From NCBI GenBank assembly GCA_904063045.1, contig CAJFCJ010000006.1:994677-1058676 (forward strand): a DNA stretch of 64,000 nucleotides, written 5' to 3'. Source of the stretch: Dimorphilus gyrociliatus. Lineage: Eukaryota; Animalia; Annelida. This document shows positions 6,100 through 47,608 of this stretch, one piece after another (positions within the stretch are counted from its first letter, which is position 1; every line of letters starts with the position of its first letter). The notes below the pieces were generated by a model, which saw only the letters and a program-made list of their open reading frames with translations, did no database searches and was not told where the DNA came from. Made by a program: the position numbers and the translations under genes.

Positions 6100-9000
6100 A
6101 TGGCAAGTAATCAGGGATCCGTAAGACCGTCCGCTTTCCAAAGAGTGGGGGCCTTCAGGTATTCGACAGGTTTTCGATATAGAGATAGCTTGGACATAAA
6201 CTGTTTAGAAAGAGAAAAACCTTTGTGCACTTCGACGCCCAATGGAACTCTTAACAATAAACCTCGAATACCCCCTCGAACATACAGAAAGAAAACTTTT
6301 CAACCAGTTGTGCTGAGCAATACTGCTCCGGAACCTCGCCTGTTCCAAGAAGTTGAGTCCAGCTATGAAAATATTAGACGAACATGCAATCAATTATTTA
6401 AAACGTCTTTCAACTCAACTTCCTCCTGCCGCACCAGCATTAGACAAACTTCGCTGTTGGGCTCTTATAGAGGAAACATATCTCATTCATCGTCAGACGG
6501 CGTGCCAAGGGATCGTTCTCCTTACATTGATGGTATGTAGAACATTTTAAAATCTATAATTTGCTCTTCTTTCTGTCTTGTTCTCTCCTCCCCCTTACCC
6601 CTTTCCTTTTAAGGATGGCACGTGTCATCTATGCGCAGCTGGGGGTCGGAATGAAACGGCTCGTTGAATTGATGTAGTAGTAATTATTGTCCGACGTAAG
6701 CACGTGTCGTTGTTTTTTGTCGTGCAACATTTTATTTTCTGCAAATTCATTTACTGCAGCATATTTCAAAGTAATGTCTTTTTTATGTTATTTTTTTCCG
6801 CCAAAACGTTTTATTCAATTCTTTTCCACGTCACATAATGTTTTAACGTTGAGTGAATGTGAAAAGTTGTTAAAGTGATAAATCCGATAATTACACCCTG
6901 TTAATGAGGTTGTATTCAGAAGATGGTGAATAACTATGTGAGATAATATCGTGCCATTGCGTGTGTTCAAGTGCCGGATTCAACTACGTTTTCGTACAAA
7001 AGATTACGTTTAGATTCTCTATATTCGCCGGTGCGTAACAAAGCTCGTCGAATGTTACGTCATCGGATACAATGACACAACCCTAGCACGCGACTCTTAC
7101 GAGCGCTTGATCGGAAATTTGATTGCTTAGGAACATATTTCAAACGAAAAATTATACCGTGAATAACTAATCTTCCGTTCAAGTCTCAAATAGCAAATAC
7201 AACATATGCAAGATTATATAAATAATAAAGGAAATGAAATTCAATGACCGTAAAAAAAAAAGCATAAGTCGTTGACAATTTTTTGAATAGAATGCAACAA
7301 CACCAAGTTTTTGTGATGAAAATTGTTTAAATTCATTCTTTTTCTACACTTGGATTTCCTTCCTTTTGGCCTTTTTTTTCTTCTCATAAATTCTAGTAAC
7401 CTTACTATTTCCGCTGATAACGACATTGCTATGCGCAACGACATATATTAACTAAAGAAATTAGGTAAATGTTATAAATTGTCTATCAAAGTGTCATAAC
7501 AGCTGGCAAACCGACCCGAACATTGAATGTTTGCCTTCCGTGAAAGGCGATTATAATAATACGCAAGCAATTAAGACATAAAGGGAGTTATTAAGAAGAT
7601 GAAAAGAAATAGGATCAAGGAGAATCAACAATCATATTGCCGTTCAATTCAATTCGCGTATTTTTCAATCTGTCTCTAACTCTTACTCTATACATTTGTG
7701 TACATTGTTTATTACTAAACTATAGGAAGTAGCTCGATGTCAGTCATATTGAAAATCCACAATTTTTTCATATTAACAACTCCACCCAAAAGTGTAAGTG
7801 TAGGGAAAAAATATTAATTAAGTGAATTAAGGCCTGTCAGCAAACTATACTGTATTGTCCAAAAAAAAAAAAATGTACGGACAAAACATAATGTGATAGC
7901 GGTTAATCTTATGGTCTTATTGTTTTCGGAATTAATGTGTTCGTAAAAAGGCTATGGAAGAGTTTAGAAAACGATCTTATACCACTTCGTCTGCTCTTGA
8001 ACGTCTCAAAGATCAGGGTCAACAGTCGAAGTGGCTTTCCGGTAAGATATAGAATCATCCTATGCGTAGAAAGCTCGCTTTTTATTGATATTCAATAAAT
8101 GAACTATCTGCATCTGCGCCACATTTCTGTGGAGCAGTTGAAATGAGAACAGTGAAAAAAAGGCACGCTCTCTCTATAAGTTGTCTGAATAAATCTTTTT
8201 CCTGTTGGAGAATTCGCCTTAGAACCCGTTGTTCCAGACGTATTCATAATAGAACTATAGTTTGTATAACATTTTTCAAGTGCTGCTTGATTCAATCGAA
8301 CCCAAGTGAATGGGGGTCGTGTGATAGTCTCTATACTGGCAATACGGATAAAGTTGAAGAAAGGGCACGTCCTATATCTAATTTCTCTTCTTCAGAAGAT
8401 GATATATTTGATGATAGAATGGAAGTCATATGGAAAAGGTGGCTAGCGTCACACGAAACGGACGCTTTTTTGCCATCTAACTGTTCATCATCAACAGCCG
8501 CTTCTTGGCCGGAAAAGATTAACAGTGTCCCGGACTTTTTAGTCCCAATCGGTGGGCCAGAATTTTCAATTAAATTAGGGTTAACTACTTGCATTGAAAT
8601 ATATCTTTGTACCGTGCTATTCTAAGTACAAGGGCGAAGGAAGGCAGCTGTATTTGATTTGAGATTAAGTATTTGTATTTCGTTCCTTCACAGATGAAAG
8701 ACTGGATACTATACGCCCTCTCACGTCTATCAGGAGTAGTATGACAAGCGTTCAGAGGAAAAAGGCGAAGACATATGTTGATAAATGCGCCATCTGTGGT
8801 TTTGCTGTGGGAATTGACCGAGTAACAACGAGGGATGATTTGTACCATACTTCCTGCTTTAAATGTACCAGGTATAAATGCTAATTAACTACGAAATGTC
8901 ATTGATAACGACTACCTATCCACTAAACTCTAGCGGCTGTTATATTTCTTTTCTTTTGAGGTTACTTGCTTGTTTTCAAAGAAATTTTTATGAAATAGGT

Positions 9001-12000
9001 TTATACGAGATTTTAATATTCCCAAAAACCTACTTTAGTATATAATAATGCATATTTGATAGATACATCATATTAATATTAAAGGTAGAAAATACTCTTA
9101 GTAGAATACTCAAAGAAACATACGTAAATTTATAGGCTGGAGATGACGTACACAGACTTAGCTTACATACTAAAAAGGATGTTAACTCCATAAGACGCAC
9201 ACACATATATATATATATTGCATATATACACGGAAAAAAATGCAGTACAGTTGCGTACATTTACTTGTTAGCACAGAATCACACAACATGTATATCTATA
9301 TATTATTGGATACAATCAAACATATTCCGTGTCCTATTCCTTTATATAACATTATAGTATATCAAAAATATATAAAGCATATACATATACAGTATATACA
9401 GCATAATATAATTTATATAGTATATGTGAATATATATATATATATATATACTGTATACTGTATGTAGGTCGCATTATACAGACGACGACGTCAGATGCGA
9501 CGACGTCGGTGCAGTGCCGGTGCATTTTCGTTGGCGAAGCGTTTGGCAGTGAGACGCTCTTCAAAGACAATTAATTAGACAGGGAACGAAAAAAAGATAA
9601 CAAAAATTTACTGTACTTTAGTAAAGAAATCGTAACGTATGTGAAGGTTTTAAATTTGATGGATAACTTCTATTATTGCTTTCTTGTGGAAGGGGAAGAT
9701 GGGGACGATGAAGAGTATATATACATTTATTTATATTTTATATTAATACATTTATAAATATATATATATATATATATATAAATTTATATACAGTATATAT
9801 ATGTATTCTAATTTGACTTGTATAGTACGCATTTATAAACTATTATATTATTTTTCTTAAGATATTGATTACCTATTGATATTATATCATATAATTTATT
9901 GTACTTTATTTTTATTATAAAGATTATACATATTTAGTTAAATAGATATTTAATATAGAGAATTTATTATACTATCCCATATTTGTTTTTTTTGCAAAGC
10001 TCTATATTCTATATATATACATTTATATATATATATATTTTTATATTGCCATATGCAACTTCTTTTTCCTAAAGTAACTTAATTATAGTTTTATTATGGC
10101 TGTCTCATTTTTTTCAGGTGCGACGTTTCTTTGTCAATTCGTAATTATAGGTAAGATATTTTTTCTTAAAATTTTTTATTATGAAAAAATTATTGATAGT
10201 CTGTCTATTCGCCTGTCTCTTCGTCTGTCCCTTTCTCCATTTCTCTTTGTATGTCTTGCTGTCTTTCCCGCACGCTCATTCATTCATTCATTTCTGTATG
10301 TTTCTATCTGTCTTCTTCCTTACTTTCATTCATTATTTCCCTTATAAACCTACGTACAAACATACGCACACGTACACAGATATTTAACTATCCTACATAC
10401 ATAAATGGATACAATGTTTCTATTCTCTCTTTTTCTCTCTATTTCCTATTGAATGAAACAAGAGAAAGCGCGATTGAAATGAGAGAAATGAAATAAAGTT
10501 GTGAATATGTTAGTGTGAATAAGTTTACGCAACGACAAGATGATGCAACATTTGTCAGGCTTCGAAGCTCATCCATGAGAGACGTAGTTTTTGACAGCTT
10601 TCTCATGAGTAGATGATGTCCAAGTAATTCCAACGGAAAATAACATATAATAACACTTAGGCCTAAGTGTCGTGCAAAATATATTTTAACTGGAAGCGAC
10701 AAGAACGTGACTATACTGTACCATATGGAAGTAGCTCCGATGCCAACAGTCGCGTACATATTCGTACATGTGCCTTACATAGATGTCATATAGAATTTCT
10801 TTAGTTTCGTTGAAAAAACTAATTGAGTCTATTAATCCTGAACTATGACTATCTAATTATTGCCCAATTGATATCATATATCGTGTATAGACCTCTTTTG
10901 ATTTTTCTACTTTTAGTGTCACCAGTAATTAAGATCAATTTCAAAGTTACGTACAGCTCTTGCGTATTTTACCCCCTTTTGCAGTTGAAATTTGCTAGAA
11001 AAACGCTAGGTGTCGCTGACCAAAAATATACATAGTTCGATCTCTAAAAGCTTAGTCATCCCTGTAAATCATCATATAGTGTGGTATTAGAGGCATTTAG
11101 ATCAATACGGCAGTCGAGCCAAGTCACACTCTATACCACAACAGAAGGGGAAAATAAATCTGAAGAATGAAATCTTTAGTTTCGCCGCCAACTGCCCTCA
11201 ATTGAGCTGTGAAGCGGATTGAAGATCAAACGGAATTTTTTATTAGGCCTACGTAGGCAAAGAGGATTATCACCAACCATATACAGTACATTTATATATA
11301 TATATATATATATAGTATATATAATAATAATAATATTATAGTATTTTTTTAAAGTTAAAAATAGCATATTCCATACATTTTTAATACAAAATTTAATTTT
11401 AAGCATAAATAGTAAGTAGATATATTAGTATGTAAATATACATACATAGTTATACATATACGTACAACAAGTATATTTGTATATATATATATATATATAT
11501 ACTTTATACACGTGTGTATTTATATTATATGTATTTATATGGAACTTCCAAGACTAGTAAAGATATTTTTATTTCTTAAGGAATTAACTAAAAGACTATA
11601 TATATTGACATGAATAATCATATATAAATATACTATATATAAATATATATATATCCAGATAAATATAAAAAAAATATATGACGACTGTATTGGGTTATGT
11701 TATTCAAGATTTGTACATTTAGTATGATTTGTTTTTCCGCATTTCGACTATAATATTGTTAAATATTGATTGATTAACGGATGAAGTTTCTATAATGCTG
11801 TCCTGTGTACGAAAACGTAAAATAACGGATTATGCTCCATTATGTAAACTGTCCGATAGACAGAAGTGTTCTTGCCATCCTACGCAGGCGTCACTTCAAT
11901 ACAGACGTTCGTTTAAGGACTGGTGGCGTTTTCACATTCGTAGGTTTGTCAATTTTTTCCTTATTGTTCTTTTGTAGTTCGTTTTGTCACTGTTATTGAT

Positions 12001-43519: not shown

Positions 43520-43754
43520 ACTTTTCACATGTTGTTAAAAATATGATTAATTTTTTTAAAATTAACAGCAACTTTCAAACGTCAGCTTCAATTCAGATAT
43601 AACAGTTCTACAAGTTAAGAAAAATTTAGCTATTAAAGTCTTGATTGATAAAATCAAGCGAAAAAGAAGGAAAAAGAAAATTAAGTTAATGATTTTATCG
43701 TTGATAATTTTCTTGAGCATTTTAACAATTATAATTATAACTTTAGGCATTCTT

Positions 43755-44585
43755 TTAAAATAAATGTCTTATTTTATCGCTTATCTTATTATCAATATTC
43801 ATTATATATCTTAGTTCAATTAACAATTTTTTAGCATTTTTCAGTTCTCTTTTTTCAAAAGCGTCTTTCAAAGAAGAAATGATTGACTCGATTCTTAATT
43901 TATTTTCTTTATCCAATTCCATAAGGGATACCTCATCATTGGAACTTTCAATTTCCTCATTTATTTCCATCATACTTAACAAAAATTCTGGTTCGGCAAT
44001 AGTTTCATCTTCTTCAAGGTAGACTTTGTTTTGCTCAAGTAGGTAAACTCCTCTGTCGAGAGGTTTTTGCAAAGTTGTATAGGCTTTATTTATCAGAGAA
44101 CTTTGCTGTTCAGAATATTCTTTTTCCACCTATAAAAAGTTGAAACTTGATATTGTATACTCATTTTTTTTCGTTTCACTAATTAATAATTAATTTACCG
44201 GTGATTTATTCGCAAATTTATCGGGATGTAGTCGCCTCTGTAAGTCCTTAAATTTTGTAGATAGGTCTTCGTTATCAACTTGAAAAGTTTCTTCAATATC
44301 CATTACTTTAAAAAAATTCTCGTTTATAGGGGGTTGTATCACTCCACATTCACAAAAAAATTGCTCAGCTTGTTTGTGAATGATTCTTTGACATTTCCAG
44401 CAAGATCTCGTGCAATAAGATTTTTTTGAAAGTTGCATCAGTTTCTGATTACCTGGAGTCTCAGAATTGTTATCTTTTTTAAAAGTAGAGAAATCATTCC
44501 TTCTCACCACCTTCGATAATTCATTTATAGTTGAATTATCATATTTTCTCAACAAACTAAAACAACGCGATACACGATTATACAT
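43755..44585 (-). CDS. HSCB: iron-sulfur cluster co-chaperone HscB/HSC20
   Basis: Exons 44585-44199 and 44129-43755. CWKC...FFCEC Zn motif, J-domain LHPDKF, SSLINKAYTTL and C-terminal helical domain. Confidence 0.93.
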
Positions 44586-44599
44586 TTGATAAAATTTTT

Positions 44600-44910
44600 C
44601 ACAACATGCAACCTTGACTTTTGACAAAATACTCGTTCTTTTGTACCAGTTTACAGCCAAATGTACGATTTTTTACGATCACGATATTTTAATCGAGCTC
44701 GCAGTAATTATTAATTTGGCCCTATATATATATAATCGATTTTTAAAAAAAGCCGATATATCTATATAATCCCATAGATCAGTTGGTTGACTTCCGGATA
44801 TTGAGAAAGCATAGGCTACGATTACTTAGTTTAAAACGTTTAGCTTACTCAGTAAGTCTCATTATATCTATATATATCTATATATATATATGATTGTCTT
44901 GCAAAGACAA
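44600..44910. promoter_or_regulatory. bidirectional promoter (HSCB vs GPANK1/PDRG1) with a short non-coding leader exon and a 55-bp 5'UTR intron
   Basis: ETS-type ACTTCCGG at 44790-44797; donor TCA|GTAAGT at 44852; acceptor AAAG at 44905-44906. Confidence 0.65.
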
Positions 44911-44921
44911 TTGTGCTCAAA

Positions 44922-45932
44922 ATGTATCGGCACCAATCTATATGTTTTGTACCCGCTTCAAATAACCATGATCAAGCTAAAGAGAAAAGTTTAGTAAAAG
45001 AGTCTAACGAAATTCGGATCGGAGAAGCAGCTAAAGAGTTCTACAATGAAATAATAGCGGAACCTTCCGAGCAGGAAGTTACTGTTAAAAGCTGTCTGGA
45101 GCCTACAGATAATTCCAACGTAGAAACAAATTGTACAAAAACTGAAGTGCTAAAGAGTAAAAAAATTCTACCATCGGACTCGTATAAATATTGTAATATA
45201 TTTTTGAAACATGCAACTGATGGAAACATTGAAAAACTGAAAGAATTGCTTTCTAAGGATTTAAATATTAACATACAGGATGACTACCAATGGACAGCGC
45301 TAATGTGTGCAGCAAAAGCGAATAATTATGAAGTTGTAGATTTTTTAATTAAGAATGGAGCTGATGTTACATGTACTGATATGAATGGTTTATCAGCGTA
45401 TGATCTCACGAATTCAACAGCAATAAAAAATTTATTTCATGATATGGAAGACGAAGATACTAATGCAGAAGATTATAATGACTCTGAAGAGGCTAATGAA
45501 GTTTATTGCAGTGTTTGTGATGTAACTGTCAAAGATATTGATGAACATGACAAGAGTATACCTCACATAATGAATAAGCCGAAGCTGGCAACAGGAAGTT
45601 GCTATTATATTCCATGCACAAATAAAGGATATCAGCTTATGATGAAACAAGGATGGGACGGGGAGAAAGCTCTCGGGAGGGAAGCCGAGGGTACGAAGTA
45701 TCCAGTGAAAACCATTTTAAAACGTGATAGAATTGGTCTTGGTGGTAATAAAAAGAAACAGATCCCAAGGGTATCTCATTTTGATCCTTTCGATACTACA
45801 GCTATAAAGCGACGATCCGAACTTTATATTAATAAATCACCAAGAATATTTAAAAAGAAGCATTTCAAAGAACAATTAAATAAAGAAAAAAAAATTGAGA
45901 GATTTTTTAGAAGAGAGTTTGATGCCTACTGA
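44922..45932 (+). CDS. GPANK1: G-patch and ankyrin repeat protein 1, single coding exon
   Basis: Ankyrin repeats (QDDYQWTALMCAAKANNYEVVDFL), C2H2-like YCSVC...HDKSIPH and G-patch NKGYQLMMKQGWDGEKALG...RDRIGLG. Confidence 0.92.
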   Translation: MYRHQSICFVPASNNHDQAKEKSLVKESNEIRIGEAAKEFYNEIIAEPSEQEVTVKSCLEPTDNSNVETNCTKTEVLKSKKILPSDSYKYCNIFLKHATDGNIEKLKELLSKDLNINIQDDYQWTALMCAAKANNYEVVDFLIKNGADVTCTDMNGLSAYDLTNSTAIKNLFHDMEDEDTNAEDYNDSEEANEVYCSVCDVTVKDIDEHDKSIPHIMNKPKLATGSCYYIPCTNKGYQLMMKQGWDGEKALGREAEGTKYPVKTILKRDRIGLGGNKKKQIPRVSHFDPFDTTAIKRRSELYINKSPRIFKKKHFKEQLNKEKKIERFFRREFDAY

Positions 45933-46009
45933 TTTAATTTTAGCATATCTTATCTGTTTACAATTCGATCGTCAAAGACTGACATAACATTTGTTTTCTA
46001 TCAGGGATA

Positions 46010-46794
46010 ATGGATCAAGATTCAAAGTTTATTTTAGAACACTTAGAGAATGTTGAAGGTATTGCTGACGATATACTCTCTCAGAAGCAGGACATTATAG
46101 AGTTGGATAAAAGGAGAAATAAAACAAGGGAAGCTATAAGGTTGTTGTTCTAATTTTAGCTTTTAAACTTTACCATCGATTTTTTCGCTGTGTGATGATA
46201 GGTGTTTAATGAAAGCCGAATCATCGGCGAAATCTTGGGTTAATTTTGGTTCAAATTTTATAAAAATGGAGAATAAAAAAGCAAGAAATATGTTAGAAAA
46301 TGGTGTGTATACTCTATATTCTATATAAACATGTTTAAATTATAGATTAAATCAGAATATCAATTTGCCAAGTCATTAATTGTCATTTAGTAATAATACA
46401 AAATATTTATCAATCTTGTATAATTAAAAACTGACATCAATAATGCGAGAATGTAATTTTTTTCAAATAATTAAGGAAGCGTCAGAGTTTACTGATGTCC
46501 CTATTTGTTTAACAATTATGGCGTATCGACTGATATCTAATGCACCGTTCTAAGTGGTTTTTTTTTAGTAATCACGTTTTAGACTTAAATTTAATAAAAG
46601 CGAAGTAATTATTTACCTCTGGTTTTTTTTTTGCAGATTTTGAAGTAATAGAAAAAGAAGTCTCGGAAAAGCGGCGACAATTAAAAGTAGGCGTAAATAA
46701 ATTAAGAGACGCTGAAAATAAAGAACCTGTGAAAGGATTCAATTTAAAACCACTTTCCGAAGCAGAATTAAAAGAGTTACGAGCAGAATTCTGA
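46010..46794 (+). CDS. PDRG1: p53 and DNA damage-regulated protein 1 (prefoldin-like)
   Basis: Exons 46010-46140, 46202-46302 and 46637-46794. ELDKRRNKTREAIR, WVNFGSNFIKM and KGFNLKPLS match remembered PDRG1 sequence. Confidence 0.9.
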
Positions 46795-47200
46795 TGAAAT
46801 TTATTGTTTTCAGTATAAATCTTTTAGAAAATACAAAGATTTTTATTTTAAACCTTTTCAAATATATATTGTATAATTATGACTATAAAAAAATCTAGTA
46901 CTCCTATCCTAAGCCAAATATAAAAGTCAGACGATTGTCTTTTTGAAAACGTCTACAGCTTTGATCAAGTATTAATATATATAATTTATTATATAAAAAC
47001 GTTTAATAATTCTGAGCCTAGACTAAAACTCAAAAAATGAATGTCTATATAAGCCAGATGTGCCTCATTTTAAATTCCATGTTAAAATTGATTGTTTAAA
47101 CCCAGAATGTTTGCTGCTATTTATTTTTGTAGAAAGCTGAATATACACTCTCTAGTTTAAAAGAAAAATAATAATTTTTACATACAGATTACAGTTGGGC

Positions 47201-47231
<31 letters not shown>

Positions 47232-47608
47232 GTATATACATATGTATAAAAGAGCCCCATAAATCCCAAGTCGCGGTGTGTATATTTACAAAAAAAAAAT
47301 ACCATAATTTAGGAATCCTTTTTTTTTTCTTCTTTTTTTTGCATAGAAAAATTTGGCGGAGATGTTGAAAGAGACTAGTAATTTTTTTTAACTGTAATAC
47401 AAATAAGTTAACAAAACAACGACTAAAAACAAAAACTACATGTTTTGATAGACATTCCCGTGTATAACCAATTTTTCTTTGTTTTGTAATGAATGATTTA
47501 AAAAAAATAGTAAATGGAAATAAGATGAGAATTACTATCAAACATATGCGATCTTATAAATGTTTAAAATCCCTGTCGTTTTAAGAACGAACGTCAGTAG
47601 GAAACCAT

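What the first reader, a model, noticed from the sequence alone, without database searches (positions are those of the whole stretch)
44790..46794. Two unrelated proteins (GPANK1 and PDRG1) apparently share one promoter and one non-coding leader exon
Seen: PDRG1 starts only 77 bp after the GPANK1 stop on the same strand. The gap has no AATAAA and no visible promoter motifs. It ends in a strong 3' splice acceptor (TTGTTTTCTATCAG at 46003-46004) five bases before the PDRG1 ATG, with no donor in the gap. The nearest obvious upstream non-coding donor is GTAAGT at 44852, which also serves a 55-bp intron into GPANK1. Inference: splicing 44851->44907 gives GPANK1 mRNA, while 44851->46005 removes the whole single-exon GPANK1 ORF as an intron and gives PDRG1 mRNA. 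The alternatives are an SL trans-spliced operon or a bicistronic transcript. The same promoter also appears to drive HSCB in the opposite direction.
Basis: partly seen in the sequence, partly recalled or inferred. Interest (0 to 1): 0.8.

Follow-up and report, generated by a model that had tools for sequence, protein, structure and literature searches.

The report
GPANK1 and PDRG1 share one leader exon
In the tiny annelid Dimorphilus gyrociliatus, assembled RNA shows that PDRG1 mRNA is made by splicing a short non-coding leader exon across the whole upstream GPANK1 gene; this is a known kind of two-genes-in-one-unit layout, but the pairing of these two genes has not been reported, and they are also neighbours in a wasp.

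Summary
The sequence observation is correct, and its central prediction holds. The window is Dimorphilus gyrociliatus (GCA_904063045.1).

- **Junction:** in a public run whose contigs are spliced, a 59-nt contig (depth 173.5) joins 44823-44851 directly to 46005-46034. That is the predicted GT..AG junction 44851->46005.
- **Colinear form:** a second contig (1212 nt, depth 217) runs unbroken from 44823 to 46034. It covers the leader, the whole GPANK1 ORF, the 77-nt gap and the start of PDRG1.
- **No spliced leader:** no foreign sequence is joined at the acceptor, and the genome paper found no trans-splicing.
- **The 55-bp intron fails:** It is retained in the contig, and a relative has no AG there at all.
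- **Conservation:** that relative (GPANK1 57% identical) keeps the GTAAGT donor, a GACTGAC branch site and the acceptor.
- **Other species:** single-exon GPANK1 followed on the same strand by PDRG1, with PDRG1's ATG just after an acceptor, also occurs in Nasonia vitripennis and in two unnamed contigs. The pair was not adjacent within the flanks fetched from seven other animals.

Verdict: a shared-leader transcription unit resolved by cis-splicing, like the cholinergic ChAT/VAChT locus. It is a new member of a known kind. The start site, the GPANK1 3' end and single-molecule structure remain untested. Two first-stage notes of this scan cover this same stretch.

The parts
44586..44789 (.). Interval between the HSCB ATG (44585, minus strand) and the leader exon; putative bidirectional promoter
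   Evidence: The position follows from the ORFs. Short blocks are conserved with L002: AATCCCATA, a TTCCG core and CCGAT. Promoter activity is inferred, not tested.
44790..44851 (+). Non-coding leader exon.
   Evidence: records 1 and 2 both contain 44823-44851. Both start at 44823, as expected if a shared upstream unitig ends at the branch. The leader has no ATG.
44852..44857 (+). GTAAGT splice donor
   Evidence: Used in the 44851->46005 junction. Conserved as cta|GTAAGT at L002 5527. Nasonia has a GTAAGT 52 nt upstream of its GPANK1 ATG.
44852..46004 (+). 1153-nt alternative intron: removed to give PDRG1 mRNA, kept in the GPANK1-coding RNA
   Evidence: records 2 (removed) and 1 (kept). The equivalent interval in L002 is about 1155 nt.
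44922..45932 (+). GPANK1 ORF, single coding exon, 336 aa
   Evidence: Pfam ankyrin and G-patch. Homologues are named GPANK1. It is the annotated gene in GCA_904063045.1.
44890..44994 (+). 34-codon upstream ORF, out of frame and overlapping the GPANK1 start; present only in the colinear RNA
   Evidence: Not conserved: L002 has no upstream ATG. It lies at the edge of a TA microsatellite.
45933..46004 (+). Gap after the GPANK1 stop, without a poly(A) signal
   Evidence: No AATAAA or ATTAAA here, nor in the corresponding stretch of L002.
45977..45983 (+). GACTGAC, putative branch site 22 nt before the acceptor AG
   Evidence: Invariant between D. gyrociliatus and L002 while the rest of the gap has diverged. 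Its role as branch site is inferred.
45990..46004 (+). Pyrimidine tract and acceptor AG (46003-46004)
   Evidence: Used in the junction. Conserved in L002 as tttgttttcaatcag.
46005..46140 (+). PDRG1 exon 1 (ATG at 46010)
   Evidence: record 3 and the joint 46138->46200 (cut +2). tblastn to PDRG1 proteins.
46202..46302 (+). PDRG1 exon 2
   Evidence: joints; tblastn.
46637..46794 (+). Coding part of PDRG1 exon 3 (stop TGA 46792-46794). The 3' UTR probably runs to about 46852
   Evidence: joint 46301->46636 (cut +1). Exon 3 hits named PDRG1 proteins. TATAAA at 46814 and AATACA at 46830. A contig boundary at 46823, with depth falling from 482 to 37, suggests a 3' end near 46852; this is inferred.
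43755..44585 (-). HSCB, divergent neighbour (two coding exons: 44190-44585 and 43755-44129)
   Evidence: HSCB_C domain and ORFs. The same divergent arrangement is seen in L002.

Best explanation
GPANK1 and PDRG1 of Dimorphilus gyrociliatus form one transcription unit that cis-splicing resolves into two messages.

Transcripts carry a short non-coding leader exon that ends at 44851. One of two things then happens:
- The strong GTAAGT donor is joined to the acceptor at 46004. This removes a 1153-nt intron holding the entire intronless GPANK1 ORF. The result is a monocistronic PDRG1 mRNA whose ATG lies 5 nt after the junction, in a good initiation context.
- The intron is not removed. GPANK1 is then the first long ORF. 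This RNA appears to continue across the 77-nt gap, which has no poly(A) signal, into the PDRG1 exons.

The share of RNAs that use the first donor would therefore set the GPANK1:PDRG1 ratio.

Shown: the junction, the colinear RNA, the shared leader sequence, and conservation of the splice signals in a relative.
Inferred: a single start site, read-through of GPANK1 RNA to the PDRG1 poly(A) site, and PDRG1 protein coming only from the spliced form.
For: -, junction: record 2 (59 nt, depth 173.5) joins 44823-44851 to 46005-46034 with no letters between and canonical GT..AG ends.
-, colinear form: record 1 (1212 nt, depth 217) is colinear from 44823 to 46034. Records 1 and 2 are the two arms of one bubble, between the leader and PDRG1 exon 1.
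-, depths: record 3 (PDRG1 exons spliced, depth 482) is close to the sum of the two arms (390). Intron-2 retention stands at only 8.5, so the colinear arm is not background DNA or pre-mRNA.
-, spliced leader: no loose end is reported at 46005.
- in L002 (GPANK1 57% identical, same gene order) the donor GTAAGT, the branch-like GACTGAC and the acceptor are conserved. No AG lies between the donor and the GPANK1 ATG, so the donor's only available partner there is the PDRG1 acceptor.
- neither species has AATAAA or ATTAAA in the gap, and the leader has no upstream ATG.
- the genome paper reports no spliced leaders.
- the same layout (single-exon GPANK1, then PDRG1 with its ATG 3-18 nt after an acceptor) occurs in Nasonia and in two other contigs.
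Against: - The RNA evidence is one run of unrecorded library type, held as assembled contigs. Contigs cannot show transcript starts, ends, strand or single-molecule structure, and a contig across two genes does not prove one transcript.
- No contig was laid on 43600-44822, so the start site is unknown.
- Only about 36% of PDRG1 exon-1 depth (173.5 of 482) is accounted for by the leader junction. The rest is colinear at 46004/46005 and could come from read-through RNA or from a start site inside the GPANK1 3' end.
- The colinear form carries an out-of-frame upstream ORF (ATG 44890) that would dampen GPANK1 translation.
- In Nasonia the annotated PDRG1 model fits a donor just after the GPANK1 stop, not the leader donor. 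The mechanism may therefore differ between lineages.
Confidence: 0.72

Rival explanations
1. PDRG1 also has, or mainly uses, its own start site inside the 3' part of the GPANK1 ORF or in the gap. The leader junction would then be only one of several routes, and the two genes would be tightly packed but largely independent.
For:: PDRG1 exon depth (482) exceeds the junction depth (173.5) 2.8-fold, so most exon-1 RNA is colinear with the genome just upstream of 46005. Contigs cannot tell read-through from an internal start. D. gyrociliatus has very short intergenic regions.
Against: The colinear arm's mean depth (217) plus the junction (173.5) already accounts for about 80% of 482 without any extra start. 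The 77-nt gap shows no promoter-like motif. Its conserved part is a branch site, a pyrimidine tract and AG, which are intron 3' signals. An acceptor 5 nt before the ATG has no role in a transcript that starts just upstream.
Confidence: 0.2
2. A true dicistronic mRNA: PDRG1 is translated from the colinear GPANK1-PDRG1 RNA by reinitiation or internal entry, as proposed for many Drosophila dicistronic pairs.
For: A colinear contig spans the GPANK1 stop, the gap and the PDRG1 start (record 1). The gap has no poly(A) signal. FlyBase annotates 159 such pairs (PMC4528330).
Against: A monocistronic spliced PDRG1 form exists at comparable depth. By general knowledge of scanning, reinitiation after a 336-codon ORF is inefficient. 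A contig across two genes does not prove a single mature molecule.
Confidence: 0.1
3. A spliced-leader trans-spliced operon: the acceptor at 46004 receives a non-templated leader.
For: The layout (short gap and a donor-less acceptor just before the ATG) looks like nematode or tunicate operons. Another first-stage note reports a similar donor-less acceptor elsewhere in this genome (s1-083761, untested).
Against: In one search the sequence joined to 46005 is genomic (44823-44851, 1.15 kb upstream on the same strand), and no contig with a foreign 5' part was reported. The genome paper found no over-represented 5' sequences and concluded there is no trans-splicing (PMC7854359). The gap has no poly(A) signal for the upstream gene.
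Confidence: 0.02
4. The 44851->46005 junction is an artefact: an assembly chimera, template switching or rare splicing noise.
For: It rests on a single run held as contigs. The tool dropped the joint from its joint table because it borders a masked TA repeat.
Against: Depth 173.5 is of the same order as the gene bodies. The ends are canonical GT..AG, with at most 1 nt of ambiguity. The contig has exactly the length expected for junction-specific 31-mers (59 nt). The donor, branch site and acceptor are conserved in a relative with saturated neutral divergence.
Confidence: 0.04

Closest known systems
Cholinergic gene locus (ChAT/VAChT; C. elegans cha-1/unc-17)
   Same: An intronless ORF (VAChT) lies inside the first intron of a downstream gene (ChAT) on the same strand. 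The two share 5' non-coding exon(s), and alternative splicing decides which protein the RNA encodes. The arrangement is conserved across phyla. Papers describing the locus are listed; the C. elegans detail is from my own knowledge.
   Different: ChAT and VAChT act in one pathway and are neuron-specific, whereas GPANK1 and PDRG1 have no known functional link. VAChT mRNAs have their own 3' ends within the intron (own knowledge). Here no poly(A) signal follows GPANK1, and its RNA appears to run into PDRG1.
Drosophila gene pairs that share a promoter and 5' non-coding exons, and dicistronic pairs (FlyBase 'rule-benders', PMC4528330)
   Same: FlyBase flags 130 genes that share a promoter and 5' non-coding exons with no shared coding sequence, and 159 dicistronic pairs, many of which also have monocistronic alternatives. 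The present locus combines both pictures.
   Different: GPANK1 and PDRG1 are not adjacent in the Drosophila species checked (D. bipectinata). This case is in an annelid whose genome paper describes regulation as canonical.
Spliced-leader operons of nematodes, tunicates and flatworms
   Same: Two same-strand genes about 100 nt or less apart, with an acceptor immediately upstream of the downstream ATG.
   Different: The 5' partner is a genomic leader exon 1.15 kb upstream (cis-splicing), not a trans-acting SL RNA. No spliced leaders are known in this species.

Membership tests
Shared-leader nested gene pair (ChAT/VAChT type) | A common 5' non-coding exon is present on RNAs for both proteins | tested here: met
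   records 1 (GPANK1-containing) and 2 (junction to PDRG1) both carry 44823-44851.
Shared-leader nested gene pair (ChAT/VAChT type) | The upstream ORF lies wholly inside the intron removed to make the downstream gene's mRNA | tested here: met
   The intron 44852-46004 contains the ORF 44922-45932.
Shared-leader nested gene pair (ChAT/VAChT type) | A single shared transcription start site and promoter | not testable with these tools
   Contigs cannot show 5' ends, and nothing was laid upstream of 44823.
Shared-leader nested gene pair (ChAT/VAChT type) | The arrangement is conserved in related species | tested here: met
   L002 keeps the order, donor, branch site and acceptor. Adjacency is also seen in Nasonia, L003 and L004.
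Spliced-leader operon | A non-templated SL sequence on the 5' end of the downstream gene's mRNA | tested here: not met
   The sequence joined at 46005 is genomic, with no loose end. The literature reports no spliced leader.
Spliced-leader operon | A poly(A) signal for the upstream gene within the short intercistronic region | tested here: not met
   No AATAAA or ATTAAA in 45933-46009.
Dicistronic mRNA (Drosophila type) | One mature, processed mRNA molecule carrying both ORFs | tested here: inconclusive
   A colinear contig spans the gap, and the depths add up (217 + 173.5 against 482). A contig is not a single molecule.
Dicistronic mRNA (Drosophila type) | The downstream ORF is translated from the dicistronic RNA | not testable with these tools
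   No translation data.
GPANK1 (G-patch and ankyrin repeat protein 1) | Ankyrin repeats followed by a G-patch domain, with best hits to named GPANK1 proteins | tested here: met
   Pfam. Hits of 31-37% identity to proteins named GPANK1 homolog in Saccoglossus, Asterias, Nasonia and others.
PDRG1 (prefoldin-like subunit) | A protein of about 130 aa matching named PDRG1 along its length | tested here: met
   Tested exon by exon only. Exon 3 hits PDRG1 of Lynx, Ischnura, Uranotaenia and Octopus. Exons 1-3 are each matched by PDRG1 proteins in tblastn. Those homologues carry Prefoldin_2. The joined protein was not searched (operator rule).

The most novel reading that the evidence does not exclude
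GPANK1->PDRG1 is an ancient cis-spliced two-gene transcription unit, dating at least to the protostome ancestor. On this reading the pair has stayed physically linked for more than 500 million years in lineages as far apart as dinophilid annelids and parasitoid wasps, because PDRG1 depends on the leader and promoter in front of GPANK1. It would be a housekeeping-gene counterpart of the cholinergic locus.

A further speculation is that GPANK1, a G-patch protein (a class known to activate DEAH-box RNA helicases), feeds back on the splice choice that excludes its own ORF.

The evidence allows the ancient-unit reading:
- Order, strand and the acceptor before the ATG are the same in four lineages.
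- TEX47 flanks GPANK1 in oyster and sea star, but flanks PDRG1 in octopus.
- DXO/RAI1 flanks PDRG1 in Nasonia, but flanks GPANK1 in sea star.

A shared leader is shown by RNA only in D. gyrociliatus.
Probability: 0.3. Interest if true: 0.7.

Novelty: new member of a known kind. Interest (0 to 1): 0.5.

Why it matters
- **For the species.** The D. gyrociliatus genome was presented as compact yet conventionally regulated, with no operons or trans-splicing. This locus shows that two unrelated proteins can still be packed into one transcription unit by ordinary cis-splicing. Such units can be missed by gene annotation: no PDRG1 gene is on record at this locus.
- **For synteny.** The same gene order in an insect suggests an old linkage that a shared leader or promoter could explain. 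That gives a concrete, testable reason for a conserved pair of neighbouring genes.
- **For experiments.** Any knock-out or knock-down that targets the GPANK1 region or the leader in these animals may also hit PDRG1.

Tried and rejected
- **Spliced-leader operon:** rejected.
no contig shows it, the colinear contig retains it, and the relative cannot have it. A rare isoform is not excluded, because contigs drop rare variants and the TA repeat 44857-44899 was masked.
- **A donor inside the gap:** none plausible.
- **More RNA runs:** only one run was served, held as contigs, with library type not on record.
- **Transcript contigs through the exact GPANK1 protein:** only the genome record was found.
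- **The D. gyrociliatus PDRG1 protein in the 1.8-billion representative library, searched with exon 3:** no identical hit, best 57%. No protein id was therefore available for a contig look-up.
- **Naming the organisms of L002, L003 and L004:** accession searches in papers found nothing. The closest kin of the L004 protein are unnamed ENA contigs. L003 is insect-like, since its GPANK1 is closest to Nasonia at 42%.
- **Rfam scan of 44600-47400:** only sub-threshold microRNA-like hits on a TA/TG repeat at 47180-47267, taken as chance.
- **C/D snoRNA in the conserved blocks of PDRG1 intron 2:** rejected by eye, because the box-like motifs are not conserved.
- **A whole-window AWTAAA scan:** uninformative; replaced by the regional scan.
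Full report
**What the window is.** The exact GPANK1-like protein is encoded on CAJFCJ010000006.1 of assembly GCA_904063045.1. Papers give that accession for the published Dimorphilus gyrociliatus genome. The genome paper (PMC7854359) describes a 73.8-Mb annelid genome with a median intron of 66 bp. [quoted passage not shown]

**Check of the observation.**
- The 336-aa ORF 44922-45932 has ankyrin repeats and a G-patch. Its homologues are named GPANK1 in many animals.
- PDRG1 starts at ATG 46010, 77 nt after the GPANK1 stop.
- The gap has no AATAAA or ATTAAA and no usable donor.
- AG at 46003-46004 closes a pyrimidine-rich acceptor five bases before the ATG.
- GTAAGT lies at 44852.
- HSCB lies divergently on the minus strand (HSCB_C).

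I read the PDRG1 exons as 46005-46140, 46202-46302 and 46637-46794. Exon 3 alone retrieves proteins named p53 and DNA damage-regulated protein 1. Those proteins carry Prefoldin_2 and match all three exons in tblastn.

**RNA evidence.** One public run holds 89% of the sampled words of 43600-47400. Its library type is not on record, but its contigs are spliced, so it behaves as RNA. Laid on the window it gives four informative pieces:
- Record 3 (266 nt, depth 482) is PDRG1 with both coding introns removed.
- Record 4 (depth 8.5) is intron-2 retention, which sets the level of unspliced background.
- Record 2 (59 nt, depth 173.5) consists of 44823-44851 abutting 46005-46034.
- Record 1 (1212 nt, depth 217) is colinear with the genome from 44823 to 46034.

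Records 1 and 2 begin and end at the same coordinates. That is what the two arms of a bubble in a 31-mer graph look like, and 59 nt is the length expected for the junction-specific words, given one ambiguous G. The tool left this joint out of its joint table because it borders a masked TA repeat; it is explicit in the table of pieces. No contig carries foreign sequence at 46005.

**What the depths allow.** The two arms sum to 390, against 482 for the PDRG1 exons. About a third of PDRG1 exon-1 RNA therefore carries the leader junction. The rest is colinear just upstream of 46005, at a level close to that of the GPANK1 body. This fits a model in which GPANK1-coding RNA runs on into PDRG1, in agreement with the missing poly(A) signal. 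Contig depths are means, however, and contigs show neither ends nor single molecules. An extra start site inside the GPANK1 3' end cannot be excluded. A contig boundary at 46823, with depth falling to 37 after TATAAA (46814) and AATACA (46830), suggests a common 3' end near 46852; this is inference.

**The 55-bp intron.** The GPANK1 contig retains 44852-44906, and no contig shows that joint. Retention leaves one upstream ATG (44890), which opens a 34-codon out-of-frame ORF in weak context. A minor spliced isoform cannot be ruled out from contigs.

**A relative.** A Logan genomic contig (L002, run SRR23372228, organism not identified) encodes a GPANK1 that is 57% identical. It has the same neighbours: an LSM14/YjeF_N gene, HSCB on the opposite strand, GPANK1, PDRG1 and an RCC1-repeat gene.
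- PDRG1 again starts 79 nt after the GPANK1 stop, and its ATG again lies 5 nt after tttgttttcaatcag.
- In an otherwise diverged gap, GACTGAC, 22 nt before the AG, is invariant, as expected of a branch site.
- The donor is conserved as GTAAGT, only 36 nt before the GPANK1 ATG, with no AG in between. In that species the donor cannot serve a short intron into GPANK1, and its available partner is the PDRG1 acceptor about 1155 nt away.

This is the strongest comparative argument that the long splice is the function of this donor.

**Wider distribution.** tblastn of PDRG1 proteins and exon peptides against loci fetched through GPANK1 or PDRG1 homologues gave the following.
- **Nasonia vitripennis (L006):** single-exon GPANK1 10001-11044, then PDRG1 with its ATG at 11150, eight bases after tatttttcag. 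A GTAAGT lies 52 nt upstream of the GPANK1 ATG.
- **L003 (ENA contig):** GPANK1 closest to Nasonia; PDRG1 ATG 3 nt after an acceptor, about 900 nt downstream.
- **L004 (ENA contig of an unnamed lineage):** PDRG1 ATG 18 nt after an acceptor, about 350 nt downstream. A leader donor and a real short intron lie in front of GPANK1.
- **No adjacency within the fetched flanks:** Saccostrea, Lymnaea, Octopus, Ischnura, Drosophila bipectinata, Asterias and Saccoglossus.

Flanking genes hint at an old cluster. TEX47 lies divergently upstream of GPANK1 in Saccostrea and Asterias, and upstream of PDRG1 in Octopus. An RAI1/DXO gene lies convergently after PDRG1 in Nasonia and after GPANK1 in Asterias.

Two cautions apply. 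In L003, L004 and Nasonia, GPANK1 is followed by AATAAA. The annotated Nasonia PDRG1 (134 aa) fits only if its ATG is split across an intron whose donor lies 15 nt after the GPANK1 stop. How PDRG1 is expressed in those species is therefore open.

**Mechanism proposed.** One pre-mRNA runs from a promoter region shared back-to-back with HSCB. Removing the 1153-nt first intron gives a PDRG1 mRNA with a leader free of ATGs and an A at -3 / G at +4 start context. Leaving it in gives GPANK1 as the first long ORF. The junction, the colinear RNA and the shared leader are shown. The single start site, the read-through and the exclusive translation of PDRG1 from the spliced form are inferred.

**Comparison with known systems.** The closest analogue is the cholinergic locus, where the intronless VAChT ORF sits in the first intron of ChAT behind shared non-coding exons (papers). 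In Drosophila, FlyBase lists 130 genes sharing a promoter and 5' non-coding exons, and 159 dicistronic pairs (PMC4528330). The kind is therefore known. What appears unreported is this particular pair: the one paper holding both gene names is an unrelated blood-transcriptome study. Its presence in an annelid described as lacking polycistronic organisation, and its recurrence in a wasp, also appear new. From my own knowledge, another subunit of the same prefoldin-like module, ASDURF, is also produced from a bicistronic mRNA; this is a coincidence worth noting, not evidence.

**Annotation.** The gene table for the locus lists GPANK1 but no gene between it and the RCC1-repeat gene. No identical PDRG1 fragment exists in the representative protein library. 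PDRG1 may be unannotated in this assembly, or it may be hidden as a shorter product of the same gene.

**Verdict.** This is a new member of a known kind, of moderate interest, which rises if the unit proves ancestral.

Noticed in passing
window 46005-46794 (L001 7084-7873): PDRG1 is not in the gene table of the assembly at this locus. No identical fragment is in the 1.8-billion representative protein library (best hit 57%). It may be unannotated, or recorded only as a shorter product of the GPANK1 gene.
   Followed up: partly
window 44190-44585, minus strand: The HSCB gene on record starts at 44303 (159 aa). The ORF continues upstream to an ATG at 44585 and adds a CWKC...CECG four-cysteine segment ahead of the J-domain HPD motif. 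The recorded product looks N-terminally truncated.
   Followed up: no
window about 46450-46615 (PDRG1 intron 2), against L002 about 7200-7385: Several blocks in the 3' half of the unusually long 334-nt intron are 80-100% conserved with the relative, for example TTTGTTTAACAATTAT..TATCGAC and TAATCACGT..TTAAATTTAATAAAA..AAGTAATTATTT, while the rest has diverged. There is no Rfam match and the C/D-box-like motifs are not conserved. It may be a regulatory element or an unknown small RNA.
   Followed up: partly
L005, L010, L008, L006: Flanking genes suggest an old cluster TEX47(-) / GPANK1(+) / PDRG1(+) / RAI1-DXO(-). TEX47 is next to GPANK1 in Saccostrea and Asterias but next to PDRG1 in Octopus. 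DXO follows PDRG1 in Nasonia and GPANK1 in Asterias.
   Followed up: partly
L006 11042-11152 (Nasonia vitripennis): The annotated 134-aa PDRG1 starts at 11057, 13 nt after the GPANK1 stop codon. This fits only if the start codon is split AT|G by an 84-nt intron (donor GTAATG at 11059, acceptor AG at 11141-11142). That suggests transcripts running from GPANK1 into PDRG1 in the wasp.
   Followed up: partly
window 44857-44899: A TA microsatellite lies inside the retained 5' region of the GPANK1 RNA. At its edge is a non-conserved upstream ATG (44890) opening a 34-codon out-of-frame ORF that overlaps the GPANK1 start.
   Followed up: partly
window 46823-47193: A contig at depth 37 continues past the likely PDRG1 3' end. 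It could be read-through, or the 3' UTR of the convergent RCC1-repeat gene (CDS from 47609 on the minus strand).
   Followed up: no
(Musca autumnalis, Condylostylus longicornis): In these two flies, PDRG1 and GPANK1 lie on contigs of identical length (211,762,785 and 23,168,558 bases), so probably on the same chromosome.
   Followed up: no
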